A stretch of DNA of 64,000 nucleotides from Haliotis rubra (GCF_003918875.1 NW_025767081.1:496001-560000), one strand, 5' to 3'; positions 3,648-54,042 are shown, counted from the first letter of the stretch. Program-made: numbers and translations. The notes: generated by a model from the sequence alone, not told the origin.

Positions 3648-5159
3648 CTATTTGGGTAAAGCTGCCCTCCAGCCAGCATGTAGTTGTTTGCTGAATTGAT
3701 CCACCAGGGCGCTGTAGGAGGAATCATAAGCCAGGTTCTTGTTTTCCTGAGGATCGCCATAATGGTCGTACAGTTCCACACCAAACACTTCTGTCCAGTC
3801 CGGCTTGTACACAGGTTGTTGGTTGAATTTAACCCACTCTGTGTATCTGTAATGATCGGTGGTCATGCTGTAGCCCATTTGATCTCCGTTGTATTCATTC
3901 CTCGGATACTGGGAGAACACAGCCTTCTTCCAGTTGGGACTTGCTGGGTTTGTTATCAGAGGTATCAAACTAGTGCCTTCAGTGCAGACAAGAACTTTAG
4001 TGGAGTTTTCTGGACAAAGATTAATAGGAGGTAGACCAGCAGCTTCTACCAGAGTAGGAAACAAATCCACAAACTCAGTGAGTTCTTCAGTCACGATGCC
4101 CTTGTCAGTGAGACCCGGCACATGTACCATCATCGGGGAGTGGGTGGCAAGCTCAAAGTCTGTGTGTTTGCACCACTCACCATGTTCCCCAAGTTGCCAA
4201 CCGTGATCTCCCCAGAAGGAGATGATTGTGTTGTTGGCCAGGCCTTGATTCTCCAGCTCCTGGATAACTCGACCCAGCTCGTAGTCCGTGTAGCTGAGGG
4301 CGCTGTAGTACCCTCTCCTCAAGTTGAGGACAACATCATTTGGGAGTGTGGTGTTGATATCTCCCGAAACGTGTAATCTCTCAATGTCAACATATTCTCT
4401 GAGTTCTGAATAATTGGACCATGCGATTACTGGCATTTTATCAGGAGCGTAGGGGTTCGGTGGAAGACTGATAGACGACAACGGGTACAAGTCAAAGAAC
4501 ATCTGTGGTGCCACAAAAGGAAGGTGAGGTTTGTGGAAACCTTGGGCGATGAAGAAAGGGCGTTCTCCAGATCTGGCCTGAGGGGCTGCTTCTCTAATCA
4601 TGTTGATTGCATAATCTGTATTCTGCATGTCCCAAAGGGAGTTGTTCTTTAGAAGGTCCATCGGCACGCTCAACCAAGTAACTTGTTCCTTGTACACAAA
4701 TTTGTTAACTGTTTTGCCAACATCAAAATATGGGTCTGTCCAGGAGATCGGATCGTTGTAGCCAGAAGCACGTCCTGGATGGAAGATCTTACCCGATCCT
4801 ATCGTCCTGTAGCCATGTTCCTTAAAATACTGAGGGATGGTGGTGAAGTTACCTCCCACATCTCTCCAGTAAGCTTGTAGATCATACACATGGGTTGTGT
4901 CCGGTCTTCGTCCTGTGAGGAGAGATGATCTGCTCGGGGAACACACAGCCTGCTGAACATGGGCTCTCTTCAACAGAAGACTCTTCCGAGCCAAACCATC
5001 AAGATTCGGTGAATGTATCGGAGGGTGGACAGGACTGGGGAAGTCTTTTCCTTCAAAAATGGAGAGTTCTGGCCTCATGTCATCAGCCACCAAAAACAAC
5101 ACATTCATGCGAGCCCGGGCGGCAGTCACCGTCAGCAGCAGAAGAATCACCCTCAGCAT
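3648..5159 (-). CDS. IDS: Iduronate-2-sulfatase-like sulfatase, copy 1 (type A), 503 aa, single exon
   Basis: Signal peptide MLRVILLLLTVTAARA; ADDMRP metal-binding motif; CSPSR formylglycine motif followed by LLTGRRPDTT; GKIFH, GFHKPH, GDHGW. The ATG at 5159 aligns with all paralogs, whereas the upstream ORF extension is not conserved. Family assignment only, orthology not shown. Confidence 0.93.
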   Translation of the reverse strand: MLRVILLLLTVTAARARMNVLFLVADDMRPELSIFEGKDFPSPVHPPIHSPNLDGLARKSLLLKRAHVQQAVCSPSRSSLLTGRRPDTTHVYDLQAYWRDVGGNFTTIPQYFKEHGYRTIGSGKIFHPGRASGYNDPISWTDPYFDVGKTVNKFVYKEQVTWLSVPMDLLKNNSLWDMQNTDYAINMIREAAPQARSGERPFFIAQGFHKPHLPFVAPQMFFDLYPLSSISLPPNPYAPDKMPVIAWSNYSELREYVDIERLHVSGDINTTLPNDVVLNLRRGYYSALSYTDYELGRVIQELENQGLANNTIISFWGDHGWQLGEHGEWCKHTDFELATHSPMMVHVPGLTDKGIVTEELTEFVDLFPTLVEAAGLPPINLCPENSTKVLVCTEGTSLIPLITNPASPNWKKAVFSQYPRNEYNGDQMGYSMTTDHYRYTEWVKFNQQPVYKPDWTEVFGVELYDHYGDPQENKNLAYDSSYSALVDQFSKQLHAGWRAALPK

Positions 5160-5201
5160 TGTAGCGTCAGAATTACATTGTGTTCCAGCTGAGGAGAACG
5201 G

Positions 5202-5261
5202 ATTTATATATTTTCTGGCCTGTGAAGATAGCAGACGATTCTTATCATTTGGAATGTTTGT
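5202..5261 (-). promoter_or_regulatory. Putative core promoter module of copy 1 (forkhead-like TGTTTGT, paired GATA sites, TATATAAAT), conserved upstream of copies 1-9
   Basis: TATATAAAT at 5202-5210 (-), AGATAG at 5226-5231, TGATAA within 5241-5247 (-), TGTTTGT at 5255-5261; similar spacing in paralogs. Motif-level evidence only; a TCTTCACAG|G splice acceptor at 5220 is an alternative reading. Confidence 0.45.
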
Positions 5262-5625
5262 TATGTGCACGTGTGACAAAACACAAAAAACATGGCCCTT
5301 AAGTGGAGCTAGCATTAACAAACACTCCTTCGAGCTGTGTAGGTCAATCCATGGACGGATGACACCAAGGGAACGCATTTCCCTTAGTCTGAATGACTGT
5401 CGATGTCAAAAACAAAGATATCGGTGTGTCAGACATTTAGGTCAGCAAAAGATAACTTGAAAGAATCTAGATTTTGATAATTTTAACAAATCCTTGGGAA
5501 CATGCACCTGTATCTTTATCGTTATATCATGGCATGGCATAAGAACCTTTCGCATGAGATAACAGATATGTTGTGCTTGGTCATAACATGTTCATACTAC
5601 TTATGCTGATTGTCTTTAAAATGTA

Positions 5626-7101
5626 TACTGAGTCCAAAAAGAAACTTCACATTCTTCTTCAGGGCACTATAAATGAACAAGAGATGGTAAGATGGTTAAA
5701 TTGTTATTATTTCATTGCTGAGATCTGTGTGATGTACTCGATACACTGGCAGTGCCGTAATCAGTTCTATTAGGCTACACCGCCGTTCCAAAACATGGGT
5801 ATACAGAATGTCAAGTCACGAGAACATAAATTCGAAATTTCTCAGTTCAATATTGTCTATGGCCGCCCCGTGAATTCACCACTGCCAAACACTGTCTCCT
5901 CATCGACTGCCTGATGCTTGTGAACACGTGGTTGGGGATTCTGCACCATTGCTCTTGCAAGGCAGCGCCAAGTTCCTGCAAATTCTGAGGTTGGTTCCTA
6001 AGACCACGAAGCCTTCTCTTAAGTGCATCCCAAACGTGCTCTATTGGATTAAGGTCAGGTCCCACCTCGATGGCCAGTCATTGACGTTGATTCCAGCGTT
6101 TTGAAGGAAATTTCGTGTCAACATCGCGGTATTCGGCCGGGCATTATCATGCTGGAACTGTAGACCTGGGCCATGGGCCGCCATGAAAGGAATGAGTTGA
6201 GGGGTGAGCACCTGGTCACGGTAAGCAGCAGCTGTGAGGTTTCCACGGATGAGCAGAAGTCGGGAACGGTTGTTCCCACAGAAGGCACCCCAAACCATGC
6301 AACTTCCGCCCCCGAATCTGTCGACTTCCTGAACACAACATTGGGCATACCGTTCACGACGTCGTCTCCAGGCTCTATGCCTGCCGTCCGCGAATCTGAG
6401 GGTAAACCTGGATTCATCGCTAAAGACGACTCGATTCCAGTCTCTCTGAGTCCATCGGAGTATTGGCCCACGATATGGACGTCAAGAATGGAGATTGTCA
6501 GCCCGCAACCAATTTCGAATGGCCTGTGAGGACAGTCGACCTCTAAACATCTCAGCCCTGGTTCGTGTAGCCGGCAGAAATCTGTCACGTAGGTGACGTA
6601 GGACGATTTGATGGTCTTCTGCTCGTGACGTCAGACATGGACGACGCGACCTTGGGCGATCAGAAGTGGTGCCAGTTTGTTGTAGACGACCTCGCAAGTC
6701 ATACACAGTAGGACGGCTGCATCCCATTGCTCTTGCAACGTCAATAACTAATTTTCCAGCTTGCAACATGCCAACGGCACGTTCTAGTTGCACATTTGAC
6801 AATCATGGCATTTCAAGTACCGTTAGAACTGTGGTTTAAATGTGTTTTTTTCAATTCTTGAGGCCAATGCAAACACGTGCATATGAAGAAAACTTCGATG
6901 CGAAGATCACGTGATCGACTGCACGTGCAAAACCTGATTTGGCACTAACGTCATTTTCATGAGTTTGAGTGGGTTTTGCTAACGTTTTTCTAGAGTCGAA
7001 AGATAGAGATCCCATTTCGGATACATAGATGTATCATCAGGGAAAAATTATTCATTACCTTTAAAAATTACATTTTGTGAAGTTTCCTTTTTGACTCAGT
7101 A
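5626..7101 (-). mobile_element. Tc1/mariner DNA transposon, decayed transposase (~5847-6811)
   Basis: TIR TACTGAGTC(C/A)AAAA(A/G)GAAACTTCACA at both ends, flanked by TA; HTH region (RPRS.RP..TS), MVWGAF, QHDNARP, PDLNPIEH motifs; stops and frameshifts. Confidence 0.92.
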
Positions 7102-7103
7102 TA

Positions 7104-9400
7104 TCTACTAGTAAGCTTGAAAGCTGTGAGTTAATAGTAAGACTTTCTGGGCATTTTTTTTACTTATTTATTTATTTACTTATTTTTACTTATTTTTATT
7201 TATTTATTTACTTATTTAAAATCATTCTGTTACATTAAAGAATTGTTCGGTCTAGTTCAAAGGCATTGTATAATTCTTCAAAATTCATGAAGCCATCATC
7301 ATTACAAATATCGCCATTTCAGTGCAAACCTTTCCCGAACCAGCTATCAATGCAAAGCTTAGAGTCATGAAATTGGTGATTAAGCCATTACGGTTCACAA
7401 AGAATGCCCTCCACATCAATCCGTGTTTTATGGATTTTAAATATTTAGATATTGAGAACATCTTTAAAGAAATGATGTTTTATATGAATGTGTTCAGCAA
7501 CGTTTGCACCCAATATAAAAATATGTTTGGTATGTATGCCGCTTAAGCTTTTAAGGCATTGATAAAGTTTTTGATATCAATCATTGCAAGTCCTCCTGCT
7601 CGTGTTTTCTTACTAACTTTTCCCGCTTTATTTAATCCCTCTTGCCATCCCAAATAAAATGAAATGAACCCTTATTCAGATCGTCTACAAAAGATTTGGG
7701 AGGATTAGGGAAGGCAATAAAAATATGTACTCAAGTAGATAGAGCAAGTGTTTTAATGACTGTAATTTTACCAATGAGCGTTAAGCTTCTTTTTCGCCAC
7801 TCGGCAAGAATTCTGTTAATATTTTCCAGTGTTTTCCTTGTATTGATAACCCAGAGGTTTTCAACATGAGCATTAAGTATTATTCGGAATACTTCAAAGT
7901 CACCTTCATGCCAATCTAGTTTAATATCTGTACAACATTACTGTCTACCATTGCAGCTATCCACAAAGCTTTGGTCTTATCAGTGTATATTTCGAGGCCT
8001 GAGATTTTATAGAAACTGTTAAGGGTCTTTATAGCATCCCTTAAGCTATTTTCACTTCCATCTCAAAACGTTGGGTATCATCTGCCTGCTCCATAGAGTA
8101 ATAGGTTTCCAACATACTCTATTTGTATTTGATTTAGGAACATGTATACAAGTTATAACCTCTCTGTTGTATGTTGCGCTTAATAATCTCTTTTTAAAGT
8201 TTCTTTCACATATCTGTTAATTCCGAATTTTAGATCAATCCAGAAGAATTGAAAGAATTCAATAGGAAATCCGTCAATACCGGGACTGTTATTATTTGTC
8301 ATTGTTTTGATTGCATTCGTCAATTCCTCGAGGTCGATGGGCTTTTCTAAATCATCCGCTGGGATAAAATCCAATACTGTGATGTTTAAATTCTGTAAGA
8401 TAGTATTGTCATTATCCACATAATTTGTATTCGATTATAGTCACTTATAAAAGTGAATTTGTTAATTGAGTGTCTGATTACCGTCAGTAATTTCATCTAC
8501 AGAGTCTGTAATCGGTCTATTTATTAATGTGTTGGTAAAAATCTATTTTCGAGATGACAAATATATTTTGAAGTTTCTCACCTTCTTCATACTAAGTAAT
8601 TCTATGCCTAATCTGCACTCCTATGTTTTCTTCATCTTTGTTTTGTTTTTGTCAAGGTCAATTTTACTCCTTGAGAGTTGACTTAGTATTTCCTCATTAA
8701 CAGTCAGAAAATCTTCTCTAATAGTGTTTCCACTTGAATTAATATTTTCTTCCAGAACCTGAGTGGGGTTAAACTTGTTCTTTTTTATATAAAGAATATG
8801 AAATAGATTTCCCCCTTACCTTCAAAAGGAAGGCATTGAATTTCCAATATCTTTTCGTTTTTCCTCACTAAGATTGCTAGATAAAGTTAATGTAATGAGT
8901 GCGTGGTCAGACTTGTATCCCGGTAGTATGTCTGAAGTATGTGTAATACTAAGGATACCAGAGGAAGCAAGAAAATAATCGAAATGGGCCTGTTGTCTTG
9001 TCTTCATTTTCCACCAAGTGTATTTTCTAACATCTGGGTTGAGAATCCTCCATACATCAACTAACTCATAGGGTTCTAGTTTTTTTCAACAGTAAATTTC
9101 TAGCTTTGGGGTTATTTATATGTTTGAAATTTTCTAAGTCTACATTTGGATTTAATACCAAATTCCAATCCCCACAGAGAACAAGACATCGGTTGTCAAA
9201 TGTATCTATATGTTCAAATAGTTCACAACAGAATTTGTGTTCATTTTTGTTGGGTTCATACACATTTACAAGTGCCATTCTAATGCCATCAATAGTTAGG
9301 TCAACAATAATATAATTACCACAGTCATCTATTTTAAACTTATGGGCATCAATTTCGAAATTATTATTGAATAATATGGCCACTCCTGTTGCATTGGATT
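7104..9400 (-). mobile_element. Degenerate L1/Tx1-like non-LTR retrotransposon ORF2 (APE endonuclease plus RT fragments)
   Basis: GVAILF, LVNVY.PN, LCGDWN, DYFL, SDH endonuclease motifs; SPGIDGFPIEFF. Boundaries approximate. Confidence 0.8.
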
Positions 9401-9750
9401 TATATGGAGGTATGTTTTTAAACTTTTTAAAGCCAAAGTTTTTAAAATAAATAATTAAAAAAGTCAGGCGTTTTCCTGAAATCATAATGCCATAATGGAT
9501 ACAACCGATGCATATAACCAATGTAATCCACATGAAATATGTAAGCCTATGGTGTTAGGGCCCCATTTTTAACAAAGTCAAAGTATCGCTGAATATTAGT
9601 GATGACAATAAATGTAATCATGCCCTACCCCATGCTCTGCATGAAAAATATATGCATGAAAAATATACCCAAAACCACATATCCAGAGAGCTTTTATATA
9701 TCACATACATCACCATGTGCTCTGAGAAGAGCATATCCTATATTTTCCTT

Positions 9751-11265
9751 CTATTTGGGTAGAGCTGCCCTCCAGCCTGCATGTAGTTGTTTGCTGAGTT
9801 GAGCCACCACAGCACTGTAGGCGGAATCATAAGCCAGGTTCTTATTTTCCTGAGGATCGCCATAATGGTCGTACAGTTCCACACCAAACACTTGGGTCCA
9901 GTCCGGCTTGTACTCAGGTTGTAAGTTGAATTTGACCCATTCCGTGTATCTGTAATGATCGGTGGTTATACTGTAGCCCATTTGATCTCCGTTGTATTCA
10001 TTCCTCGGATACTGGGAGAACACAGCCTTCTTCCAGTTGGGACTTGCTGGGTTTGTTATCAGCGGTATCAAACTAGTGCCTTCAGTGCAGACTAGAACGT
10101 TGGTGGAGTTTTCTGGACAAAGATTAATAGGAGGTAGACCAGCAGCTTCTACCAAAGTAGGAAAAAGATCTACAAACTCGGTGAGTTCTTCAGTCACGAT
10201 GCCCTTGTCTGTGAGACCCGGCACATGTACCATCATAGGGGCATGGGTGGCAAGCTCAAAGTTCGTGTGTTTGCACCACTCACCATGTTCCCCCAGTTGC
10301 CAACCGTGATCTCCCCAGAAGGAGATGATTGTGTTGTTGGCCAGGCCTTGATTCTCCACCTCCTGGATAAGTCGACCCAGCTCGTAGTCCGTGTAGCTGA
10401 GGGCGCTGTAGTACCCTCTCCTCAAGTTGAGGATGACATCATTTGGGAGTGTGGTATTGATGTCTCCCGAAATATGGAATTTCTCAAGGTCAACGTATCC
10501 TGAACGTAGTTCTGAATAATTAGACCATGCAATAACCGGCATTTTATCAGGAGCATAGAGGTTGGGTGGCAGACTGATGGAGGACTCGGGGTACATGTCA
10601 AAGAACATCTGTGGTGCCACAAAGGGAAGATGAGGTTTGAAGAATCCTTGAGCGATGAAAAATGGACGTTCTCCAGATCTAGCCTGGGGGGCTGCTTGTC
10701 TGATCATGTTAACTGCATAATCTGCATTCTGTGTGTCTGCAAGGGAGTTATTCTTTAGAAGGTCCATCGGCACGCTCAACCAAGTAACTTTTTCCTTGTA
10801 AACAAAATTGTCAGCCTCTTTGCCTACATGAAAATATGGGTCGGTCCAGGAGATCGGATCGTTGTAGCCAGAAGCAGTTCCTGGATGGAAAATCTTACCC
10901 GATCCTATCGTTCTGTAGCCATGCTCCTTAAAATACTGAGGGATGGTGGTGAAGTTACCTCCTACATCTCTCCAGTAAGCTTGTAGATCATACACATGGG
11001 TAGTGTCTGGTCTTCGTCCAGTGAGGAGAGATGATCTGCTCGGCGCACACACAGCCTGCTGAACATGGGCTCTCTTTAACAGAAGACTCTTCCGTGCAAG
11101 GGCGTCAAGGTTTGGTGAATGTATCGGAGGATGAACAGGACTGGGGAAGTCTTTTCCTTCAAAAATAGTGAGTTCCGGCCTCATGTCATCTGACACCAGA
11201 AACAACACATTCATGCGAGCCCGGGTGGCAGTAATCGCCAGCAGCAGAAGAGTCAACCTCAGCAT
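9751..11265 (-). CDS. IDS: IDS-like sulfatase, copy 2 (type B), 504 aa
   Basis: Same motifs with CAPSR and GFFKPH variants and a 1-aa insertion (ELRSGY); ATG at 11265 begins the signal peptide MLRLTLLLLAITATRA. Confidence 0.93.
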   Translation of the reverse strand: MLRLTLLLLAITATRARMNVLFLVSDDMRPELTIFEGKDFPSPVHPPIHSPNLDALARKSLLLKRAHVQQAVCAPSRSSLLTGRRPDTTHVYDLQAYWRDVGGNFTTIPQYFKEHGYRTIGSGKIFHPGTASGYNDPISWTDPYFHVGKEADNFVYKEKVTWLSVPMDLLKNNSLADTQNADYAVNMIRQAAPQARSGERPFFIAQGFFKPHLPFVAPQMFFDMYPESSISLPPNLYAPDKMPVIAWSNYSELRSGYVDLEKFHISGDINTTLPNDVILNLRRGYYSALSYTDYELGRLIQEVENQGLANNTIISFWGDHGWQLGEHGEWCKHTNFELATHAPMMVHVPGLTDKGIVTEELTEFVDLFPTLVEAAGLPPINLCPENSTNVLVCTEGTSLIPLITNPASPNWKKAVFSQYPRNEYNGDQMGYSITTDHYRYTEWVKFNLQPEYKPDWTQVFGVELYDHYGDPQENKNLAYDSAYSAVVAQLSKQLHAGWRAALPK

Positions 11266-11692
11266 TATGGCGTCTAAATCACACTGTCTTCCAACTGACG
11301 CGAAATGATTTATATATGTTCTAGCCTGTGAAGATAGCAGACGATTCTTATCATTTGGAATGTTTGTTATGTGCATGTGTGACAACAACACAACAAAAAC
11401 AATGTTACATGGCCCTAAACAGGAGCCGGCATTAACAGAACACTCCTTCGTGCCAGTTCGTGTAGGTTTGGTAAATCCATGGAAGGACAACACGAAGGGA
11501 ACACATTTCTCTTGGATGGAATGACAATCGATGTTAAAAAAACAAAGACATCGGTGCGTCAGACATTGAGGTCAACTAAAGGTTAGTTGAAAGAATTTAG
11601 ATTTTGATAAACGAAATTTTACAAATACTTGGGAACATGCACCTGTGTCTTTATCGTTATATCATGGCATGGCATAAGAACCTTTTGTATCA

Positions 11693-12050
11693 GACAATTC
11701 TTATCATTTGGAATGTTTGTTATGTGTATGTGTGAGAAAAACACAATAAAAGCAATGCTACGTGGCCCTAAACAAGAGCTGGCATTAACAGAACAGTCCT
11801 TTGAGCCAGTTCATGTAGGTTTGGAAAATCCATGGAAGGATGACACCAGTGGAGCACATTTCCGTTAGCCTAGATGAATGTCAAAAACAAAGATGACCGT
11901 ATGTCAGACATTGAGGTCAACTAAAGATTAGTTGAAATAATTTAGATTTTGATAAACGAAATTTTACAAATACTTGGGAACATGCACCTGTGTCTTTATC
12001 GTTATATCATGGCATGGCATAAGAACCTTTCGCATCAGACAATCAATCTG
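11693..12050 (-). promoter_or_regulatory. Orphan second copy of the sulfatase upstream region (matches the copy 7 upstream region)
   Basis: Tandem repeat of ~11340-11692, but diagnostic bases match ~39693-40050. Confidence 0.6.
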
Positions 12051-12417
12051 TTGTGCTTGGCCATAACATGCACAGACTGCCTATACTGATTGTTTTTAAA
12101 ATGTATTTATGGTTTTCAGTAAATGCAAAATGTAAACGCGAGGGAATGTCCAGTCATTATTATCTGACGAAACAGATTCTACTGGAAGTATTGGCAGAGC
12201 AGCAGCGGAAATAGAACGGATCACGGGGAAGCAACGACGACACAAAGAAGTTCGCAAAAAGACTTAACATGTCCTGCACAAAGAAGAAATATGACTCTTC
12301 AGCTGAAAATGAACTTGGATGTCCTCGATCAGTTTGTAACTGGAGAGGATATTTGGTATCATCAGTCTTCTTTCCATCTATGAACTGTTATGGTCATGAT
12401 TGTTTTCATAGTGAAAA

Positions 12418-12672
12418 GTGAGTGAGTGAGTGCGTGAGTGTAGGATTACGCAGCACTCAGCAATATTCCAGCTATATGGCGGCGGTCTGTAAATAATCGT
12501 GTCTGGATCAGGCAATCCAGTGATCAACAACATGAGCATCGATCTACGCAGTTGGGAGCCAATGACATGTGTCAAACAAGTCAGTGAGCCAGACCACTCG
12601 ATCACGTTAGTCGCCTCTTACGACAAGCATCGGTTACTGAAGACCAATTTTAACCCAGATCTTTGCGGGTTC
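12418..12672 (-). mobile_element. SINE-like repeat, family B
   Basis: ~250-bp dispersed repeat containing GTCGTAAGAGGCGACTAA and the same GCTGGAATATTGCT..(ACTC)n tail as family A. Confidence 0.75.
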
Positions 12673-14137
12673 GTAGTGAAAAGCGGCCGCGGGGTAGCCC
12701 TGCCATGCCGAAGTCTCGGGTCCAATTCGCAGTAGGGATACATTGTGTGCAGGTTCTGGTGCCCCCATGATCATGATATTGCTGCATCATTGATAAACGC
12801 CGAGAAAAACTGTAGTTACTCACTCAATTACTGTAACAGAGTAACCCCAAAACTGTGGTGTACGACTCAAACTTCACCTCTCCCCCTCTCTCGCGTGATT
12901 ACAGTGACGCCTCACCTCAATCCAATGGGTCAATTTATCGGTTCCAGAAGAAAGCGACAGTATCTGAATGCTAACGGTAATTGTGACCACGGTTGAAGAA
13001 TATTTTTAGTGAAAGCTGACCTTTGATTGTCCATTTATTATATCTCCATTTTTAGACGTTTAAGAGAAAAATCACATTTAGTCATTTCCTCGCTGGAGCC
13101 GGAAACACCTTCGTGGCCGAGTGGATAGAGCGTCATATCGGTGTTTCGATCCATAAACATGGTTATACAAAAAATCGAAAAAATTGAAAATTACGTCGAC
13201 TGGATGGTTCGGAGTCAGTATATCTTATGGCTTAGATGTGAATCCATGTTTATCTGTGACATGATGTTTCAATTCGTTAGTCCGGACTTGTACAGAATTC
13301 ACACAAAGATGTGCACTCATGAGATGATCGTTAACACAATCATAAATGCCCTTTCATTCCATCTAGCTATTTTCAGGTTTATGCTACAAATGTTAATAAA
13401 TATTCTGTTATCTTTGAATAGTTTGATTTGAAGATGAGTTTAACTTGAAGAAGTTTAGAGTTGCAATGTGTCTGGCGTGTTAAATAATTTGGGTGGTATG
13501 AACAAAAGAGCATTATGGCCTCAGATGTTTACAATGTGATGAAAGCAACAAGCAAATGTATGGTGCCTGTTGTACATCAAGAGTGATAATCGAGGTGATT
13601 CGAAAATATGATCACAGATTCTGGTTCTCCTAAATGAAAAGGTGTAATCTGAATCCACTGCAAGAGGATCTTGGATGAGATAAAGGGACGCCACTTTACA
13701 CATTAAATAACCCGTTCTTACATCAATTGCCCTCTCAAAGTAATGGAATAAACGGAACACAATTCTTCCGTTCTCTTAGACTCGATGTTCGAAACAAGGT
13801 TGTTCTCATATAAAACATGTAAACGTCAGACAATTACCAGTCTCCATTACTGATGGAACATATTTCACTGGACGTCAAAGGTAAACAAAATGCATGAAAA
13901 CTATAGGAATGGATCACTGAAAGGTTAGAAATAGAGTAAGCTAAATTATCAAATTGTCAAACCGGTAGCTCTCACCAGTCACGCTATTTGCATAAACAAT
14001 TACGAGCATATATCAAGGTATCTAAAACTGGATTCTCCAGACAGCTTTAATATTGCCCAGTGCGGCGTCAAACAACCACAATATATTCTTACACACATCA
14101 CCAGGTACTCTGATTGGAGCATCCCGTATATATTCTC

Positions 14138-20303: not shown

Positions 20304-20433
20304 TATTGCGTCTAAATCACACTGTGTTCAAGCTGAAGAGAATGGATTTATGTATCTTCTAGCCTGTGAAGATAGCAGACGATTCTTATCACTTGGAATG
20401 TTTGAAATTTCATGTTTGAAAAAACATAAAATA

Positions 20434-21930: not shown

Positions 21931-21932
21931 TA

Positions 21933-43340: not shown

Positions 43341-45433
43341 TATGGCGTCTTAATTACACTGTCTTCCAATTGACGAGAATGGATTTATCTATTTTCTAGC
43401 CTGTGAAGATAGCAGACGACCCTTATCATTTGGAATGTTTGCTATGTTCATATGGCCCTGCACAAGGACTGGCATTAGCGCAAGGACGTCCAGGTCCGGT
43501 GATTCCATAGGAGGTGTCAGACATGGAGCAGGGTGTCAGACATGGAGGTCAACTGAAGATTACTTGAAAGTATTTATATTTTGATAAGCGACATTTTTCA
43601 AATTTTTGGGAACATGCACCTGTGTCTTTATCGTTACCTCATGGCATGGCATAAGAACCTTTTGTATCAGACAACAGGCCAGACTGTGTGGTTCATGGTC
43701 ATGACATGTGTATTCTGCCTGTTTTGATTGTCTATGAAACGTATCTACGGTTTTCAAGAAATGCAAAATGTGAACCCGAAGGTATGACCAGTCTTGATTA
43801 TCCAATGGAAGAGATTCTATTGAAAGTAAAAGCCAAACAGCAGCTGCAGTGGAAAACAACGATGACATCGCAAAAAGGATTAGCATGTCCAGCATTAAGA
43901 AGAAATGCGACTCTTCAGCCAAAAATGAATTTGGGTTTTTTTAATGTGCGTACTTGGTTTGGACATACTGGTTGACATCTATGAACTGTTATGGTCATGG
44001 TTGTTTTGATATGTACAATGTGTTTAGGCTCTTGTGGCCCACCCACCCTGATATTGCTGCGTCATTGATACACGCCGAGATATACTCAATCACTATAACA
44101 GAGTAACCTCGTTCACTCGAACTCCATAACGTGCAGAATCGATTACAGTAGTATACTTTCTCAAAACTATCGGGCACTACTGTTGTATTCCATACATCTG
44201 AACTGGGATACAGGAACCTAGTAGCCATATTCGCACACAACCCTTTGCGTCAAGATTGGAATGTTAAAATGTTAAATGTGTGGTATTTTCAAACTATTAT
44301 TATTTTCTGGTACAGACATGAAGCTGAACAGCCTCTCGCCCTTGCTCAAACACTCATTTTCTTGCTCACTCACTCACTCTGTCCCTTTCTGAGGCACACT
44401 CTCTCCTGCTCATCCATTAGCTTCTTCTCCTCTTTGTTAATCCACTCACTTACCTGCCCTTACTCAATCTTTCTCAACCTCTTGCTCATTCGCCCTCTAG
44501 CTACCTCCCTTGAACACTCACTCACTCTTGACCACCCACGCCCCTGTTCTCTCCCGTTCTTAAAGTGACGCTCGTCTCAACTCACTCTTATAGTCATTGT
44601 GAAATACCGGAAAAAAGCATGAGTATCCAAATGCCAGCGGTAACTGCGATCACGGCAGAAAGGTGGTTTCTGACAATGCTATAACGTCATGAACTTGATG
44701 ACGTCACAATGTTATGACATCACTAAAATGCAAGTCTATTGGTAGTACAGTGTTCAGAGATGTACATATTTCATTGAAAACTAATGTGAACTAAAAGTAA
44801 AAATATCTTCCGTAAGCCTCGGATATTTGTAACTTTATCAAGAAGTGTTGATATAATTGATATTAGTAGACACTTGGGTGAGGTTCTCTATATGCTAACA
44901 TTGAAGAGTTTAGCTTGGAGATGAATTAAACTTTGGGCACTTTACAGTTGTCGTGTCTCGTGTATGTCAGGTTAAATAGGGGAGGTATAGACAAAAAGGG
45001 ATGATGGCCTCAGTCGTTTCAACTATGGTGAAACCAACGAGCAAATGCATGGTGCTTATGCATCAAGACTCCTAATCAGGTAATCTAAGTACTGGAAAAA
45101 AACAGCAATATGTGACTCTTCATTTTGATGTGGCTCAATAGTCCAAACAAAGTAATTATGACGTATGAAAGGTGTACGTGAGAGAATAACCAGTCCAGTT
45201 TATCAGATAAATCAGATCCATATGCTAAAAGCAAATTTATGAAGATTATTGGAACGGATCACTTACATTTAGTGATGACACTAAATGTAATCATGCCCTA
45301 CATGTAGCTCCCATGCTATTTGCATTACAACTATATGCATGTAAAAATATACCAACACCTATATTGTCTAGAGAGCTTTAATATATCACACAGATCACCA
45401 GGTGCTGATTGGAGCATCCCCAATATATTCCTC

Positions 45434-46945
45434 CTATTTGGGTAAAGCTGCCCTCCAGCCAGCATGTAGTTGTTTGCTGAATTGAACCACTAGGGCTCTG
45501 TAGGAGGAATCATAAGCCAGATTCTTGTTTTCTTGAGGATCGCCAAAATGGTCGTACAGTTCAACACCAAACACTTGGGTCCAGTCCGGCTTGTACACAG
45601 GTTGTATGTTGAATGTGACCCACTCTGTGTATCTGTAATGATCGGTGGTCATGCTGTAGCCCATTTGATCTCCGTTGTATTCATTCCTCGGGTACTGGGA
45701 GAATACAGCCTTCTTCCAGTTGGGACTTGCTGGGTTTGTTATCAGAGGTATCAAACTAGTGCCTTCAGTGCAGACTAGAACGTTGGTGGAGTTTTCTGGA
45801 CACAGATTAATAGGAGGTAGACCTGCAGCTTCTACCAGAGTAGGAAACAAATCCACAAACTCAGTGAGTTCTTCAGTCACGATGCCCTTGTCAGTGAGAC
45901 CCGGCACATGTATCATCATAGGGGCGTGGGTTGCGAGCTCAAAGTCCGTGTGTTTGCACCACTCACCGTGTTCCCCTAGTTGCCAACCGTGATCTCCCCA
46001 GAAAGAGATGATTGTGTTGTTCGCCAGGCCTTGATTCTCCAGCTCCTGGACTATTCTTCCGAGTTCGTAGTCAGTGTAGCTGAGGGCGCTGTAGTAGGCT
46101 CTCCTCAAATTGATGATGACGTCGTTTGGGAGTGTGGTGTTGATGTCTCCCGTAACATGTAATTTCTCAATGTCAACGTATTCTCTGAGTTCTGAATAAT
46201 TAGACCATGCAATTACCGGCATCTTCTCAGGAGCGTAGAGGTTGGGTGGGAGATTGATGGAGGACTCGGGGTACAAGTCAAAGAACTTCTGTGGTGCCAC
46301 AAAAGGAAGGTGAGGTTTGTGGAAACCTTGGGCGATGAAGAAAGGACGTTCTCCAGATCTGGCTTGAGGGGCTGCTTCTCTGATCATTTGAATCGCATGG
46401 TCATTATTCTGTGTGTCTTGAAGGGAGTTGTTATTAAGAACATCCATTGGCACATTCAACCAGGTAACGAACTCCTTGTATACAAAATAATTGGCTCGAC
46501 CTCCTACTTCAAAATATGGGTCTGTCCAGGAGATCGGGTCGTTGTCGTTAGAAGCATTTCCTGGATGGAAAATCTTACCCGATCCTATCGTTCTGTAGCC
46601 ATGTTCCTTAAAATACTGAGGGAGGGTGGTGAAGTTACCTCCCACAACTCTCCAGTAAGCTTGTAGATCATACACATGGGTTGTGTCTGGTCTTCGTCCT
46701 GTGAGGAGAGATGATCTGCTCGGGGAACACACAGCCTGCTGAACATGGGCTCTCTTTAACAGAAGACTCTTCCGAGCGAGGGCGTCAAGGTTGGGTGAAT
46801 GTATCGGAGGATGTACAGGGGTGGGGAAGTCTTTTCCTTCAAAAATGGTGAGTTCCGGTCTCATGTCATCTGCCACCAAAAACAACACATTCATACGAGC
46901 CCGGGCGGCAGTCACCGCCAGCAGCAGAAGAGTCACCCTCAACAT
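45434..46945 (-). CDS. IDS: IDS-like sulfatase, copy 9 (type D'), 503 aa
   Basis: Intact ORF; closest to copy 4 (WRVVGG, NASNDNDP, QNNDHAIQM). Confidence 0.93.
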   Translation of the reverse strand: MLRVTLLLLAVTAARARMNVLFLVADDMRPELTIFEGKDFPTPVHPPIHSPNLDALARKSLLLKRAHVQQAVCSPSRSSLLTGRRPDTTHVYDLQAYWRVVGGNFTTLPQYFKEHGYRTIGSGKIFHPGNASNDNDPISWTDPYFEVGGRANYFVYKEFVTWLNVPMDVLNNNSLQDTQNNDHAIQMIREAAPQARSGERPFFIAQGFHKPHLPFVAPQKFFDLYPESSINLPPNLYAPEKMPVIAWSNYSELREYVDIEKLHVTGDINTTLPNDVIINLRRAYYSALSYTDYELGRIVQELENQGLANNTIISFWGDHGWQLGEHGEWCKHTDFELATHAPMMIHVPGLTDKGIVTEELTEFVDLFPTLVEAAGLPPINLCPENSTNVLVCTEGTSLIPLITNPASPNWKKAVFSQYPRNEYNGDQMGYSMTTDHYRYTEWVTFNIQPVYKPDWTQVFGVELYDHFGDPQENKNLAYDSSYRALVVQFSKQLHAGWRAALPK

Positions 46946-47604
46946 TATACGTCTAAATCACACTGTCTTCCAACTGATGAGTACGGATTTATATATTTTC
47001 TGGCCTGTGAAGATAGCAGACGATTCTTATCAGTTGGAAGGTTTGTGAAGTTTGAAAAATAGACCATCCAGCCCTCAACAATAGCAATCAACAGAAGTCC
47101 CCTCCAGGAACTGAGACGTTTGTGTTGGTTGAATCTTGACATCCAAAGCAACGCACATCCCATAGTTTGAATGACAGTCAATGCGAGAAGCAGTGGCATC
47201 ATCCTTTGTTAGACATGGAGGTCTACTTGAGAGAATTCAAAGTCTGATAAGGAGAAAGTGTAAAAATGTTTTGAAACACGCACCTGTCGCCATACATGTG
47301 ATAACAGCACAGGCGAGCAGTGCATGGTCGGAACCTCACAGTTACTTATCCATGCTGGAGTGTACGAAATGAATGACACTGTAGGAGAGACATACCAGTC
47401 TCGGTGTTCCGATACAATAGGTACCACTTGAAAATATCGTGAAAATGAAATGGAAGGATCACTGATGTCCATCCTTAGATGGAATGTAGCAGGTCCTTCC
47501 TTACAAAAGAATATTTTGCTAAAAAAGATAAGTTCGGAACTTGTTACAATTTGCTTGTTGTTCAAGTACAAATGTCTGTTATATGCCTTTGGAGGAAGAA
47601 CATG

Positions 47605-49980: not shown

Positions 49981-51525
49981 ATGTTCTGGCACCGTTTGAC
50001 CGTCGCGTTGATTCTAGTTGTTGTGCACGTCCATTGCAAACGGAAAAATGTATTATTTCTTGTGGCAGATGACATGAGACCAGATCTGGACGTGTTCAAA
50101 GGAAGAGACTCGCCGTCCCCCGTGAGAGAAAAGGTCCACGCCCCCAATTTGATCTCTTTGACAGGGAGGAGCCTTCTCCTACGTCGTGCCTATGTACAGC
50201 AGGCACTGTGTAGCCCGAGCCGCACCTCCCTCCTGACTGGGCGCCGTCCTGACACCACCCACGTGTACGACCTTGACACTTACTGGAGAAAGGTCGCTGG
50301 CAACTTTACAACATTACCCCAGTACTTTAAAAACCACGGCTACAATACCCTTGGCTTTGGGAAGATCTTCCATCACGGAGACGCATCAGGAAACAATGAT
50401 CCGTTATCATGGTCAGAGCCATACTATGAGACCAAACCAGAGGTGAATGGTTTTGCTACTGATGGGAATTCATGGCGAGCGGTACCTACGAATCTTTTAA
50501 AGAGCAATTCCCTTCAAGACACCATCACTACAAACGTGGCTATTCAGAAGTTGAAGTCCATTGCACCCAAAGCCCGATCTGGACAGGAACCCTTCTTTTT
50601 AGCACTTGGTTATCACAAGCCACATCTTCCATTTGTCTTTCCGGAGAAGTTTCTGAGCTACTACCCAGATGATTCCATTCACCTACCTCCTAATCAGTAT
50701 CCACCTCTGGACATGCCGTCTATTGCTTGGACAAGATACCCCGAGCTGAGGTCATACAAAGACATTGCTCATCTGAATGCATCTGGAGAGCCCAATACAA
50801 CCCTACCAGCTAATGTGGTAAAGGCCCTGAGACGGGCCTACTACAGTTGCATCTCATACATCGACGAGGAACTGGGAAGAGTCTTAACGGAACTGGAACA
50901 GCAAGGGTTGGCAGATGACACAATTATATCCTTCTTTGGGGACCATGGATGGCAGTTAGGTGAACATGGGTTGTGGAGCAAACACACCAACTTCGATGTA
51001 GCTACCCATGCCCCTATGATGCTGCACATACCCGGACTCACCGACCAAGGAATAGTGACAGAAGAGCTTGTGGAATTTGTAGACCTGTTCCCTACACTGG
51101 TTGATGCTGCTGGGCTTCCCACTCTTCAAGTCTGCCCTGAAGATTCCTCAAAGATGGATGTGTGCACAGAAGGACAGAGTTTCCTCCCTTTGATCAAGCA
51201 GCCCAAAACTGATAACTGGAAGAATGCTGCATTTTCTCAGTTTCCTAGACACCAGAATCTTCGTCATCAGATAATGGGGTACTCGATGACGACCGGTCGT
51301 TATCGATACACTGAGTGGGTCGGATTTGACGGTACTCATTACAAACCCCACTGGTCAGCATTGTATGGTGCAGAGCTGTATGACCATTATCAGGATCCAC
51401 AGGAGAACGTCAACCTGGTTCATGAGCCTGCCCACAAGGGCCTGGTGGCCAGGCTCAGTAATCGTCTTCACGCAGGGTGGAGACATGAAGTAACCACTCA
51501 CCAGGGGCCTTCTATTATTGGGTAA
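49981..51525 (+). CDS. IDS: IDS-like sulfatase, copy 10 (divergent paralog), 514 aa
   Basis: Signal peptide, ADDMRP, CSPSR..LLTGRRPDTT, GKIFH, GYHKPH, GDHGW; AATAAA at 51535-51540. Confidence 0.92.
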   Translation: MFWHRLTVALILVVVHVHCKRKNVLFLVADDMRPDLDVFKGRDSPSPVREKVHAPNLISLTGRSLLLRRAYVQQALCSPSRTSLLTGRRPDTTHVYDLDTYWRKVAGNFTTLPQYFKNHGYNTLGFGKIFHHGDASGNNDPLSWSEPYYETKPEVNGFATDGNSWRAVPTNLLKSNSLQDTITTNVAIQKLKSIAPKARSGQEPFFLALGYHKPHLPFVFPEKFLSYYPDDSIHLPPNQYPPLDMPSIAWTRYPELRSYKDIAHLNASGEPNTTLPANVVKALRRAYYSCISYIDEELGRVLTELEQQGLADDTIISFFGDHGWQLGEHGLWSKHTNFDVATHAPMMLHIPGLTDQGIVTEELVEFVDLFPTLVDAAGLPTLQVCPEDSSKMDVCTEGQSFLPLIKQPKTDNWKNAAFSQFPRHQNLRHQIMGYSMTTGRYRYTEWVGFDGTHYKPHWSALYGAELYDHYQDPQENVNLVHEPAHKGLVARLSNRLHAGWRHEVTTHQGPSIIG

Positions 51526-51662
51526 GGTTCCAGTAATAAAAAACTGAAACGTGTTCGAAGTAATTGTATATAATTAGTAGTTAAAAGATGTGAGTGGGTA
51601 GGAGAGGTTGGTTTTATGCCGTTTGAACAGTGTTTCATTATCCGCTGTGTCTACATGATTTT

Positions 51663-52077
51663 TGAGTGAGTGAGTGAGTGAGTTTAATGCAGCAGTTTTA
51701 GCAACATTTCAGCCATATCACGGCGGGGGATACCAGATATGGGTTTCTCACGTTGTACCCATGTGAGTAATCGAACCCGGGTCTTTATCGTGATGAGCGA
51801 ACGCTTAACCCACAAGACGCGCATGATTTTGGAGGAACGACCTAGGTAATGTAGGTGCGAGCGTGAGTGAAATTCACGAGCAGTTGGATGGTGCAGACAG
51901 TAAGTGAGTGAGTGAGAGAATGAGTTTGGTTTTAAGCCGCTTATAGCAATATTCCAGCAATATTACGAAGAGGGACACCAGAAATGGGCTTCACACATTG
52001 TACCCATGTGAGGAATCGAATCCGAGTCTTCAGCGTGACGAGCGGACGCTTTAACCACTAGGCTACCCCACCGCCCC
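51663..52077 (-). mobile_element. Two adjacent SINE family A copies (~51663-51812 and ~51904-52077)
   Basis: (GAGT)n tails and tRNA-like heads on the - strand. Confidence 0.8.
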
Positions 52078-52513
52078 TAGTAAGACATGAGGTGAGGTGG
52101 GGTTTAACATTGTGATCGTTAGTACTGCACTTAGACAGTGACGTGCATGCACGTATGTGTGGCTGCTCCGGTGGGGAATAACATCAGTTATACATCACTA
52201 AGCCACTGAAATATCATGGATAATCAGTTCATACAAATTACCTCCATTACCTTTATGCTCATCGCCAGGCATGGCAGCATCAAGTACCATTTAACCTTTT
52301 TGTATATAATGCGATCAGGGATGTAACAAATGGATACATTGGGGTGGTATTTATTGAGTCATATGTCTAACTGTAAAACGATCCTGCTGAGGGAATATTT
52401 TTATACTGAACAGTACCATTCTCAGTTGTTTAAATTCCAAACATGATGAAATAATAACGCTAAAACGATAAGTGATTTCCTAAATGAGCACATTTAATGA
52501 AGTACTGTACCCT

Positions 52514-54042
52514 TCAACCGATGATGACACCGCCATTACTTCCCGCCATCTGGGCTCTCCACCCAGCACGGAGCTGTTTCCTCAACTGGCCGCGAAGTCC
52601 TTGCTGGGAAGCATGTCTCGCGATGTTGTGATTCTCCTGAGGATCGTTCAGATGGTCGTACAGCTCCACTCCATGAAGCTGGTCCCACTGAGGCCTGTAA
52701 TCCGGCTTACTGAGGAAAGTAACCCATTCAGTGTAGCGATACCTGTCCGTGGTGATTGTGTAGCCCATGACTGGCTTGTGACTATACCTTCTCGGGTACT
52801 GAGAGAAGGCTGCGTTCTTCCATGTGGTCAGACTTGGCTGCTTCAACAGAGGAACTAGACTGGTTCCTTCTGTGCAGAGGTGACTTGAGGACGAGTCCAG
52901 TTGACATGTTGATAGTTTGGGAAGACCTGCTGCTTCTACAAGAGTCGGGAACAGGTCCACAAACTCTGTCAGTTTTGTTGTACTCATTCCTTTGTCAGTC
53001 ATCCCTGGGACGTGGATCATTAGAGGTGAGTGGGTAGCGATGTCAAAATTGGTGTGTTTACACCATTCTCCGTGTTCCCCTAACTGCCAGCCATGATCGC
53101 CGAAAAAGACACAATAGTGTTGTTGGCAAGGCCTTGCTTCTCAAGCGCATCAAGAACCTTCCCGAGTTCAAAGTCCATGTAGCTGACAGCGCTGTAGTAG
53201 GCTCTGCGGAGTTGCTTAACCACCTGGTCAGGCAAAGTCGTGTTCGGGTAGCCCGATGCATTTAGTGGAGCTATGTCAGTGTAGTGCCTCAGTTCGCCAT
53301 AAGTTGCCCAGGCAATATGAGGCATGCCGTCAGGAGCTCGTGGGTTGGGAGGAAGATGAATTGAGTCTTCTGGGTAATAATCCAGGAAGCGAGCTGGAAA
53401 CTCGAACGGCAGATGGGGCTTGTGGAACCCAACAGCCAGGAAGAAATTCTCGCCATTCTTTGTTTTTTGAGTGATGTCGTTTATTACCTGTACGGCGTGA
53501 TCGGCTATTAAGGTGTCTTGTAGAACATGCTGGCTGTCGAGTAGATTATCTGGTACAGCTTTCCAGCTTGATCCATCTTCGAGGTAATGGTTTGCTTCAT
53601 GGGCATCGAAATATTTCTCAGACCACGAGACGGGATCATTTCCTCCTGAAGCTTTACCCGGGTGGAATATCTTGCCAACTCCAATACTGTGGTAGCCGTG
53701 GTTCTTGAAGAACTGAGGAATGGTGGTGAAGTTGCCGCCAACGTGCCTAAAGTAATTGTCAAGGTCGTACACGTGGGTTGTGTCAGGACGGCGCCCAGTC
53801 AGGAGAGAGGTGCGGCTCGGGGAGCATAGAGCCTGTTGAGCATAGGCTCTCTTGAAGACCATACTCTTACTGGCGAGACCTGCTAGATTGGGAGCGTGGA
53901 TTGGTGGATGAACCGGAGATGGAAAGTATGGGCCATCGTACATGGGCAGCTCAGGACGCAGGTCATCAGCGCAGAGGAACAGGACGTTCATTCGGGCACT
54001 GACGCACGATATCAAGCAGAAGACGTATATTACAAACTCCAT
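52514..54042 (-). pseudogene. IDS: IDS-like sulfatase, copy 11 (divergent paralog), 1-bp frameshift (may be an intact gene with a sequencing error)
   Basis: ORFs 53080-54042 and 52514-53020 join into one sulfatase if the A5 run at 53103-53107 is A6, restoring VSFFGDHGWQLGEHGEWCKH; minus-strand AATAAA at 52350-52355. Confidence 0.85.

What the first reader, a model, noticed from the sequence alone, without database searches (positions are those of the whole stretch)
3648..54042. Cluster of 11 intronless, secretory-pathway IDS-like sulfatases: a candidate host-encoded system for desulfating dietary polysaccharides
Seen: 11 full-length paralogs (9 intact) in 50 kb, each with a signal peptide, a CxPxR formylglycine motif, DD/GKxFH/KPH/DHG/K active-site residues and N-glycosylation sequons. 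Known: human IDS is a single lysosomal enzyme for heparan/dermatan sulfate, while bacterial members of the same sulfatase subfamily (S1_7) include enzymes acting on algal sulfated polysaccharides such as ulvan. Inference: a lineage-specific expansion repurposed for digesting sulfated seaweed glycans in a herbivorous invertebrate (likely a mollusc).
Basis: partly seen in the sequence, partly recalled or inferred. Interest (0 to 1): 0.85.

Follow-up and report, generated by a model that had tools for sequence, protein, structure and literature searches.

The report
Abalone IDS-like sulfatase gene array
A blacklip abalone chromosome carries eleven side-by-side, intron-free genes for secreted sulfate-removing enzymes; they belong to an old sister family of the human Hunter-syndrome enzyme, not to that enzyme itself, and they may help digest sulfated sugars in food, although that was not tested.

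Summary
The window (Haliotis rubra) holds 11 single-ORF sulfatase genes: 9 intact, one with a TAG stop and one with a 1-bp frameshift. All have a signal peptide, the CxPSR motif and every catalytic residue.

- **Not the IDS orthologue.** Haliotis keeps a separate multi-exon IDS. The array belongs to an old animal "IDS-like" clade that also includes sponges, annelids and bivalves. This clade lacks the IDS residues and loops that hold iduronate. At those positions it carries the residues of bacterial S1_7 enzymes, including the ulvan xylose-2-sulfatase 6HHM.
- **The amplification is lineage-specific.** Copies c1-c9 arose after the H. rubra/H. rufescens split. They form four types, followed by a ~20-kb block duplication, and are under purifying selection (dN/dS 0.07-0.25).
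- **The family is not specific to seaweed eaters.** Single-exon tandem copies also occur in non-algivores.
- **The digestive role is plausible but untested.** No RNA data were available, so it rests on inference.

Five copies are already annotated in RefSeq. The scan had already noted similar sulfatase arrays elsewhere in this genome. Interest is moderate.

The parts
3648..5159 (-). c1, intact 503-aa IDS-like sulfatase gene, type A
   Evidence: ORF and tblastn; 97.6% aa identity to c5; identical to a RefSeq-sourced protein
9751..11265 (-). c2, intact 504-aa gene, type B; F replaces the residue equivalent to human H226
   Evidence: annotated
14138..15649 (-). c3, intact 503-aa gene, type C
   Evidence: annotated
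18786..20303 (-). c4, type D copy with one premature stop (TAG at 19458-19460) and a 2-aa insertion; a pseudogene, or an error/polymorphism
27840..29351 (-). c5, intact 503-aa gene, type A; modelled at pLDDT 95
34071..35582 (-). c6, intact 503-aa gene, type B; F replaces the residue equivalent to human H226
38106..39617 (-). c7, intact 503-aa gene, type B (extra local duplicate of the c6 unit)
41829..43340 (-). c8, intact 503-aa gene, type C
45434..46945 (-). c9, intact 503-aa gene, type D
49981..51525 (+). c10, intact 514-aa divergent paralogue (about 62% identical to c1-c9)
52514..54042 (-). c11, divergent paralogue broken by a 1-bp frame change in a T run near 53105; its orthologues in H. 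rufescens are intact
29352..29452 (-). Conserved ~100-bp proximal promoter, shown here for c5; the same block lies directly upstream of c1-c9. It holds TGATAAG at -88, CTATCT at -72, a TATA box at about -51 and CATTCC
   Evidence: alignment A1; motif positions
2878..20431 (.). First copy of the duplicated block (types A-B-C-D = c1-c4)
   Evidence: self-blastn: colinear 91-95% matches to 27069-47046
27069..47046 (.). Second copy of the duplicated block (A-B-B-C-D = c5-c9)
   Evidence: pairing c1/c5, c2/c6/c7, c3/c8, c4/c9 in protein identity and in the tree
30002..30232 (-). Short relic with weak similarity to aa 132-204 of the sulfatase (36% identity)

Best explanation
Shown:
- The window holds a tandem array of complete, single-exon transcription units. 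Each has a TATA promoter, a 1.5-kb ORF and a poly(A) signal.
- They encode formylglycine-type sulfatases of SulfAtlas-type subfamily S1_7 that enter the secretory pathway.
- They are not the abalone's iduronate-2-sulfatase. They belong to an old animal paralogue clade ('IDS-like') found from sponges to molluscs.
- This clade keeps the full catalytic machinery but has the compact, bacterial-type substrate cleft. The C171-C184 hairpin, the SD1-SD2 linker and the K479 loop are absent. Y/F stands in place of R273 and H in place of Y348.
- In lophotrochozoans the family has no coding introns, whereas a sponge member keeps introns at positions shared with canonical IDS. This points to an old retrocopy.
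- In the H. rubra lineage one gene was amplified to nine after the split from H. rufescens. It first diverged into four types, then a ~20-kb block was duplicated. All copies are under purifying selection, which is weaker in a 60-residue segment homologous to the part of human IDS beside the substrate site.

Inferred:
- The enzymes are made in the digestive gland or gut.
- There they strip sulfate esters, most likely 2-O-sulfates on sugars without a carboxylate, from food-derived sulfated glycans so that glycosidases can act. This could happen in the gut lumen or in the lysosomes of digestive cells.
- The paralogue types would cover somewhat different sugar contexts.
For: - **Anatomy:**
- **Family:** Pfam Sulfatase plus SGSH_C. 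Human IDS 5FQL matches at E 5e-98 and S1_7 6HHM at E 1e-63. The AF2 model has pLDDT 95 and TM 0.84-0.85 to both.
- **Paralogue status:** canonical IDS forms a 100% clade (fish, urchin, starfish, shrimp, Biomphalaria) separate from the IDS-like clade. H. rufescens has a canonical IDS, P0314, in a 16.4-kb gene with at least 8 exons on another chromosome, only 39-43% identical to c5.
- **Cleft differences:** alignments A2. The same residues appear in 6HHM. The roles of R273, N167, Y348, K479, H226 and C171-C184 come from PMC5472762. 6HHM is an ulvan endo-xylose-2-sulfatase (PMC9096561, PMC9825549).
- **Not HGT:** the best bacterial matches are 35-45% identical. Named animals and named bacteria separate at 99-100% support. 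The animal-only C422-C432 loop is shared with canonical IDS.
- **Introns:** single-exon copies occur in H. rufescens, Patella, Mactra and Owenia. The sponge gene has 4 exons, with two introns matching canonical IDS introns.
- **Timing and selection:**
- **Digestive context:** the Sulfatase Pfam domain is enriched among mussel digestive-gland transcripts (PMC5549309). Sulfatases are present in the scallop hepatopancreas proteome (PMC5159873). Fucoidan-degrading and desulfating activity from abalone hepatopancreas, Pecten and Patella is cited in PMC6315715, which states that no fucoidan sulfatase sequence was known at that time. Two GATA-type motifs lie in the invariant promoter.
Against: - There is no expression evidence. 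The only runs that hold the locus look like genomic DNA.
- There is no enzymology for any member of the IDS-like clade.
- The family and its tandem single-exon copies also occur in animals that do not graze seaweed: Owenia, Capitella, bivalves and sponges, and 35 members are reported in Alvinella. The amplification therefore need not reflect macroalgal diet.
- The variable segment has pN/pS of about 0.35, not above 1. Diversifying selection is not demonstrated.
- GATA motifs are not consistently present upstream of homologues in other species.
- The pocket inference rests on homology to a docking model, not on a substrate complex.
Confidence: 0.55

Rival explanations
1. The enzymes edit or recycle the animal's own sulfated glycans (mucus, extracellular matrix, shell or egg-coat polysaccharides) rather than food.
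For: The same family is expanded in non-algivores. The Alvinella authors link its 35 IDS-family genes and many sulfotransferases to an endogenous sulfated-carbohydrate chemistry (PMC12403961). The family is also present in sponges and tube-building annelids. The products enter the secretory pathway.
Against: Housekeeping turnover does not obviously need nine near-identical paralogues that arose within one abalone lineage. Sulfatases are enriched in bivalve digestive glands. None of this is decisive.
Confidence: 0.25
2. They are redundant copies of the lysosomal iduronate-2-sulfatase that degrades heparan and dermatan sulfate, as the database name suggests.
For: The best solved-structure match is human IDS. 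All catalytic residues are conserved. RefSeq names them 'iduronate 2-sulfatase-like'.
Against: A separate canonical IDS orthologue exists in Haliotis. The array falls outside the 100%-supported canonical clade. Three of the four residues that hold 2S-IdoA in the human docking model are replaced or deleted. The C171-C184 hairpin and the lysosomal processing linker are absent.
Confidence: 0.05
3. The intronless genes were acquired recently from bacteria by horizontal transfer.
For: They have no introns and a compact bacterial-like architecture. The cleft residues are identical to those of PVC/Bacteroidota S1_7 enzymes.
Against: The best bacterial identity is 35-45%, against 60-65% to sponges, annelids and bivalves. 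Animals and bacteria separate at 99-100% support. An animal-only Cys-Cys loop is shared with canonical IDS. The sponge member has introns at canonical IDS positions. The genes have eukaryotic TATA and poly(A) signals.
Confidence: 0.02
4. The array is an assembly artefact (uncollapsed haplotypes) or a set of decaying pseudogenes.
For: Two of the 11 copies are broken. The copies are 90-98% identical in protein.
Against: Synonymous divergence between copies is 0.13-0.39, with dN/dS of 0.07-0.25, far beyond allelic variation. The intergenic sequences differ and carry different transposon fragments. In independent runs the summed depth over the CDS is roughly 8-10 times that of a single-copy flank.
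Confidence: 0.03

Closest known systems
Human/vertebrate iduronate-2-sulfatase (IDS; PDB 5FQL, 6IOZ; SulfAtlas S1_7)
   Same: Same fold (TM 0.84-0.85). Same catalytic set: D45, D46, C84, R88, K135, H138, H229, D334, H335 and K347. Both have the C422-C432 loop, a signal peptide and N-glycosylation sequons.
   Different: It is a paralogue, not the orthologue. It lacks the C171-C184 hairpin, the SD1-SD2 processing linker and the K479 loop. R273 is replaced by Y/F and Y348 by H. It carries its own 8-residue insert, KDFPSPVH. It has a single exon against 8-9 exons, and occurs as a multicopy array against a single gene.
[quoted passage not shown]
   Same: Same subfamily, same compact ~475-500-aa architecture, and the same residues at the positions of human R273 (Y) and Y348 (H). 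It aligns in a single stretch at E 1e-63, with TMt 0.85.
   Different: Only about 30% identical. It is bacterial, lacks the animal Cys-Cys loop and the 8-residue insert, and sits in a polysaccharide utilisation locus rather than a eukaryotic tandem array. The substrate of the abalone enzymes is unknown.
Arylsulfatase-B expansion in scallop and other molluscs, proposed for algal polysaccharide digestion (PMC5159873)
   Same: The same idea: duplicated host sulfatases in the mollusc digestive gland as an adaptation to sulfated algal glycans. The scan's notes report ARSB-like intronless arrays in this same abalone genome.
   Different: A different S1 subfamily (ARSB, S1_2). Those proteins were detected in hepatopancreas by mass spectrometry, whereas no IDS-like protein was reported there.
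IDS-family (PTHR45953) over-representation in the vent annelid Alvinella pompejana (PMC12403961)
   Same: The same PANTHER family is expanded (35 genes) in a lophotrochozoan. Annelid members fall in the IDS-like clade in my trees.
   Different: Alvinella is not an algivore. The authors interpret the expansion as endogenous sulfated-glycan chemistry or symbiosis. No array structure or paralogue/orthologue distinction is given.

Membership tests
S1 formylglycine-dependent sulfatases | C-x-P-x-R FGly motif plus metal-binding and catalytic residues (DD, K/H, H, DH, K); Pfam PF00884 | tested here: met
   PF00884 at E 4e-44. CSPSR/CAPSR, DD, GKxFH, KPH, GDHGW and WxKH are present in all 11 copies and invariant across 15 IDS and IDS-like proteins.
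S1 formylglycine-dependent sulfatases | Cys is actually converted to formylglycine by FGE/SUMF1 | not testable with these tools
   Needs protein chemistry. The presence of SUMF1 in the genome was not examined.
SulfAtlas subfamily S1_7 | Closest characterised relatives are S1_7 members; assignment by the SulfAtlas HMM | tested here: inconclusive
   The top three sequence and fold matches in the PDB are the S1_7 enzymes 5FQL, 6IOZ and 6HHM, well ahead of other subfamilies. The SulfAtlas HMMs themselves were not available.
Canonical iduronate-2-sulfatase (IDS orthologue, EC 3.1.6.13) | Groups with vertebrate IDS in a phylogeny | tested here: not met
   The canonical clade (fish, urchin, starfish, shrimp, Biomphalaria) has 100% support and excludes all window copies. 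Haliotis has its own canonical IDS, P0314.
Canonical iduronate-2-sulfatase (IDS orthologue, EC 3.1.6.13) | Substrate-site features of human IDS: R273, Y348, K479, the C171-C184 hairpin and the SD1-SD2 linker | tested here: not met
   R273 is replaced by Y/F and Y348 by H. The K479 loop, the hairpin and the linker are absent. All of these are present in P0314 and other canonical IDS.
Canonical iduronate-2-sulfatase (IDS orthologue, EC 3.1.6.13) | Hydrolyses the 2-O-sulfate of alpha-L-iduronate in heparan/dermatan sulfate | not testable with these tools
   Needs an enzyme assay.
Digestive (food-processing) enzyme of the mollusc digestive gland | Enters the secretory pathway | tested here: met
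   The N-terminal leader is M-L-R plus a hydrophobic run ending ARA. There is no other hydrophobic segment, and six sequons are conserved. This is read from the sequence; no predictor was run.
Digestive (food-processing) enzyme of the mollusc digestive gland | Expressed in digestive gland or gut; the protein is present in gut fluid or digestive-cell lysosomes | not testable with these tools
   No RNA run was found. The two runs that hold the locus behave like genomic DNA.
Digestive (food-processing) enzyme of the mollusc digestive gland | Copy number tracks an algal diet | tested here: inconclusive
   c1-c9 are specific to the H. rubra lineage. However, tandem single-exon copies also occur in Owenia, Mactra, Patella and Pinctada, and 35 members are reported in Alvinella. 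No systematic census was possible.
Retrocopy-derived gene family | All coding introns are absent while relatives keep introns at conserved positions | tested here: met
   Single-exon copies occur in Haliotis, Patella, Mactra and Owenia. The sponge IDS-like gene has 4 exons. Its introns at FH|PG and GDHGW| coincide with introns of the canonical Haliotis IDS.
Retrocopy-derived gene family | Poly(A) remnant and target-site duplication | not tested
   Not expected to survive, because the intron loss predates the mollusc-annelid split.

The most novel reading that the evidence does not exclude
The IDS-like clade may be an ancient animal family of digestive carbohydrate sulfatases that kept the bacterial S1_7 pocket. 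On this reading it removes 2-O-sulfate from sugars without a carboxylate, such as xylose-2-sulfate in ulvan or fucose-2-sulfate in fucoidan. The abalone array would then be the gene basis of the fucoidan-degrading and desulfating activity reported from abalone hepatopancreas in 1967. According to a 2018 paper, no sequence was then known for any fucoidan sulfatase (PMC6315715).
Probability: 0.25. Interest if true: 0.7.

Novelty: new member of a known kind. Interest (0 to 1): 0.45.

Why it matters
- **Annotation.** If the inference holds, 'iduronate 2-sulfatase-like' is a misleading name. It would hide an old, widespread family of animal-encoded sulfatases whose pocket resembles bacterial enzymes that act on algal polysaccharides.
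- **Orphan activity.** It would give candidate genes for the long-known mollusc activities that desulfate fucoidan and other algal glycans.
- **Applications.** It would offer eukaryotic, secretion-competent enzymes for seaweed processing, and markers for feed conversion in abalone farming.
- **Evolution.** It is a clear example of an old retrocopy family that amplifies by tandem and block duplication in separate lineages. It sits beside the ARSB-like arrays that the scan noted elsewhere in the same genome.

Tried and rejected
- **Expression.** The look-up of sequencing runs returned only two runs of unknown kind from one study. When laid on 41500-47499 they covered the CDS and one 3' flank. 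There were about 23 million short contigs. A single-copy flank had depth 16/51 and the CDS sums were roughly 8-10 times higher. I read this as genomic DNA of a close relative, not RNA, so it gives no expression evidence.
- **Literature.** No paper was found for iduronate sulfatase together with abalone, digestive gland or hepatopancreas.
- **Gene conversion.** The idea that the copies are homogenised by gene conversion is rejected, because synonymous divergence is 0.13-0.39.
- **Positive selection in the variable segment.** This is not shown at window level: pN/pS is about 0.35. No site-level codon model was available.
- **GATA motifs as evidence of gut expression.** They are present in c1-c10 and the H. 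rufescens orthologues but not in Patella, Mactra or Owenia. I kept this only as a lead.
- **ESM Atlas search.** It added nothing beyond 'IDS or bacterial sulfatase'.
- **My own recollection.** I had recalled that 6HHM acts on rhamnose-3-sulfate. The papers say endo-xylose-2-sulfate.


Full report
**What is there**

- Nine are uninterrupted ORFs: c1-c3 and c5-c9 are 503-504 aa, and c10 is 514 aa.
- c4 carries one TAG at 19458-19460, where its closest paralogue c9 has TTG.
- c11 shifts frame by one base in a run of T near 53105. This could be an assembly error.
- Pfam finds Sulfatase plus SGSH_C.
- All copies have a hydrophobic leader ending ARA, the C(S/A)PSR motif, and the residues equivalent to human IDS D45, D46, R88, K135, H138, H229, D334, H335 and K347.
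- c1-c9 share six N-glycosylation sequons.
- c1-c9 are each preceded by an almost invariant ~100-bp block with a TATA box about 50 nt before the ATG. c10 and c11 lack it.
- Each copy is followed by AATAAA or ATTAAA 52-114 nt after the stop, except c2.

These are therefore compact, self-contained, single-exon transcription units.

**Organism and annotation**

The closest database proteins are named 'iduronate 2-sulfatase-like [Haliotis rubra]' and lie on a contig of 1,013,842 bp. Five of the copies (c1, c2, c3, c6, c9) are present letter for letter in NCBI/UniRef. At least two further copies of the family, P0004 and P0422, lie on the same contig outside the window. The scan's own notes report four more IDS-like genes just upstream, and several ARSB-like intronless arrays elsewhere in this genome. 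I did not verify those notes.

**Structure of the array**

Protein identities and the tree sort c1-c9 into four types: A (c1, c5), B (c2, c6, c7), C (c3, c8) and D (c4, c9). Self-comparison of the DNA shows a colinear duplication of about 2878-20431 onto 27069-47046 at 91-95% identity, plus a local duplication of the c6 unit that produced c7.

Synonymous divergence is 0.13-0.17 between block partners and 0.2-0.39 between types. dN/dS is 0.07-0.25. The copies are therefore kept similar by purifying selection on the protein, not by ongoing gene conversion.

Against H. rufescens, dS is 0.51-0.68 to the sister gene P0002 and 0.54 for the orthologous pair c11/P0097. c1-c9 form a 99-100% supported clade that excludes all H. 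rufescens genes. The nine-fold amplification thus happened in the H. rubra lineage after the two lineages split. H. rufescens made its own duplicates and has one pseudogene at the syntenic site next to an NRF/EF-hand gene.

**What family it is**

The best solved relatives by sequence are human IDS (5FQL, E 5e-98) and the S1_7 ulvan sulfatase 6HHM (E 1e-63). A high-confidence AlphaFold model (pLDDT 95) matches both at TM about 0.85.

The genes are nevertheless not the abalone's IDS.
- A search seeded with the Biomphalaria IDS finds a canonical IDS in H. rufescens, P0314 (590 aa). It is encoded by a 16.4-kb gene with at least 8 exons on another chromosome and is only 39-43% identical to c5.
- In the tree, fish, sea urchin, starfish, shrimp and Biomphalaria IDS form a 100% supported clade. 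The window's genes sit in a separate clade with sponges, annelids, bivalves and limpets.
- All named animal sequences are separated from the named bacterial ones at 99-100% support. The best bacterial identities are 35-45%.

**Pocket comparison**

The structure paper for human IDS names the following (PMC5472762):
- R273, N167, Y348 and K479 as the residues that hydrogen-bond docked 2-sulfo-iduronate;
- H226 as a +1-site contact;
- the C171-C184 hairpin as lying beside the substrate site;
- residues 444-453 as the lysosomal processing linker.

In the alignments (A2) canonical IDS from chicken to Haliotis keeps R273, Y348, K479, the hairpin and a long linker region.

The whole IDS-like clade, sponge included, has Y or F at the R273 position and H at the Y348 position. 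It lacks the K479 loop, the hairpin and the linker. It has an 8-residue insert of its own (KDFPSPVH).

The Y/F and H states and the compact architecture are those of bacterial S1_7 enzymes, including 6HHM. [quoted passage not shown] Xylose-2-sulfate is in effect a uronate-2-sulfate without the carboxylate.

The animal-only C422-C432 loop is shared by canonical IDS and IDS-like proteins and is absent in bacteria. This supports a duplication within animals rather than gene transfer.

My inference is that the IDS-like enzymes keep an ancestral pocket that does not recognise iduronate's carboxylate. Their substrate is therefore probably a different sulfated sugar.

**Variation between paralogues**

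Of 96 variable columns among the eight intact c1-c9 proteins, 15 have three or more states. Eight of those 15 lie in residues 128-190. This segment aligns with human IDS residues ~143-207, which include N167 and the C171-C184 region. pN/pS there is about 0.35, against 0.1 or less over most of the protein. That shows relaxed constraint, or diversification at a few sites, but positive selection is not demonstrated. In addition, c2 and c6 have F at the H226 position.

**Introns**

Single-exon family members, often in tandem, occur in H. rufescens, Patella caerulea, Mactra antiquata and the annelid Owenia fusiformis. The sponge Corticium gene has four exons. Two of its introns, at FH|PG and after GDHGW, coincide within about a codon with introns of the canonical Haliotis IDS. 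The simplest reading is an old retrocopy in the lophotrochozoan stem, followed by many lineage-specific amplifications.

**Function**

I could not obtain expression data. The two runs that hold the locus behave like genomic DNA.

Indirect support for a digestive role:
- entry into the secretory pathway;
- the bacterial-type pocket;
- recent amplification under purifying selection in a seaweed grazer;
- enrichment of sulfatase-domain transcripts in mussel digestive gland (PMC5549309);
- sulfatases in the scallop hepatopancreas proteome, with the same adaptive idea proposed there for ARSB (PMC5159873);
- old biochemical reports of fucoidan degradation and desulfation by abalone hepatopancreas, Pecten and Patella. 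PMC6315715, which cites them, states that no fucoidan sulfatase sequence was known in 2018.

Against a seaweed-specific reading:
- the family and its tandem copies are common in deposit feeders, filter feeders, sponges and a vent worm.

A broader version fits the distribution better: digestion of sulfated glycans from any marine food, in the gut lumen or in digestive-cell lysosomes. An endogenous role in mucus or matrix turnover remains a serious rival.

**Verdict**

The genes are already annotated, the enzyme family is known, and the scan noted sister arrays in the same genome.
- the demonstration that the array is a paralogue family distinct from IDS, with a bacterial-type pocket;
- an old loss of all coding introns;
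- a dated two-step amplification specific to the H. rubra lineage.

Interest is moderate (0.45). It would rise if the enzymes prove to be the missing animal sulfatases for algal polysaccharides.

The window contains no N stretches.

Noticed in passing
window 5160-5260, 11266-11366, 15650-15750, 20304-20404, 29352-29452, 35583-35683, 39618-39718, 43341-43441, 46946-47046 (- strand): The ~100 bp upstream of the ATG is nearly invariant in c1-c9, more conserved than synonymous sites. It holds TGATAAG at -88, CTATCT (a reverse GATA motif) at -72, CATTCC, and a TATA box near -51. c10 has four WGATAR motifs within 135 bp, against a background of 0.45 per 150 bp. GATA factors commonly drive gut genes, but this is only a lead.
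   Followed up: partly
window 11338-12043: The promoter region of c2 is tandemly duplicated (345-bp unit, 2 copies, 86% match). This leaves a second promoter-like module with no gene behind it.
   Followed up: no
window 20686-21642, 22538-22906, 24396-25049: Fragments of Tc1/mariner-type transposases (DDE_3, HTH_Tnp_Tc3_2 and HTH_29 hits) lie between the two duplicated blocks.
   Followed up: partly
window 9066-9533 and 33408-33833 (- strand): Two paralogous ORFs, carried inside the duplicated block, look like the endonuclease end of a non-LTR retrotransposon. They gave no Pfam hit at E 1e-3.
   Followed up: partly
window 44500-44899: In two public runs this stretch has a summed contig depth of 10^4-10^5, against tens for neighbouring single-copy DNA. 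It is a very high-copy repeat of the abalone genome. No tRNA-like part was found.
   Followed up: partly
window 66-481 and 2465-2880: Two 416-bp direct repeats, 99.3% identical and 2.4 kb apart, resemble an LTR-like pair or a very recent local duplication.
   Followed up: no
window 54251-54912, 56142-56467, 59985-61001, 63527-64000: Downstream of the array lie a CT-rich low-complexity tract and three minisatellites (23-bp x14, 18-bp x58, 32-bp x15). They coincide with strong strand-composition skews (GC skew +0.23 at 54-56 kb and -0.35 at 60-62 kb).
   Followed up: no
L067:1775-3247 (H. rufescens): The syntenic H. rufescens locus holds an unannotated, frame-broken IDS-like pseudogene beside two intact copies and an NRF/EF-hand gene. 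Two more intact copies lie about 120 kb away (L072). The cluster therefore turns over independently in each abalone species.
   Followed up: partly
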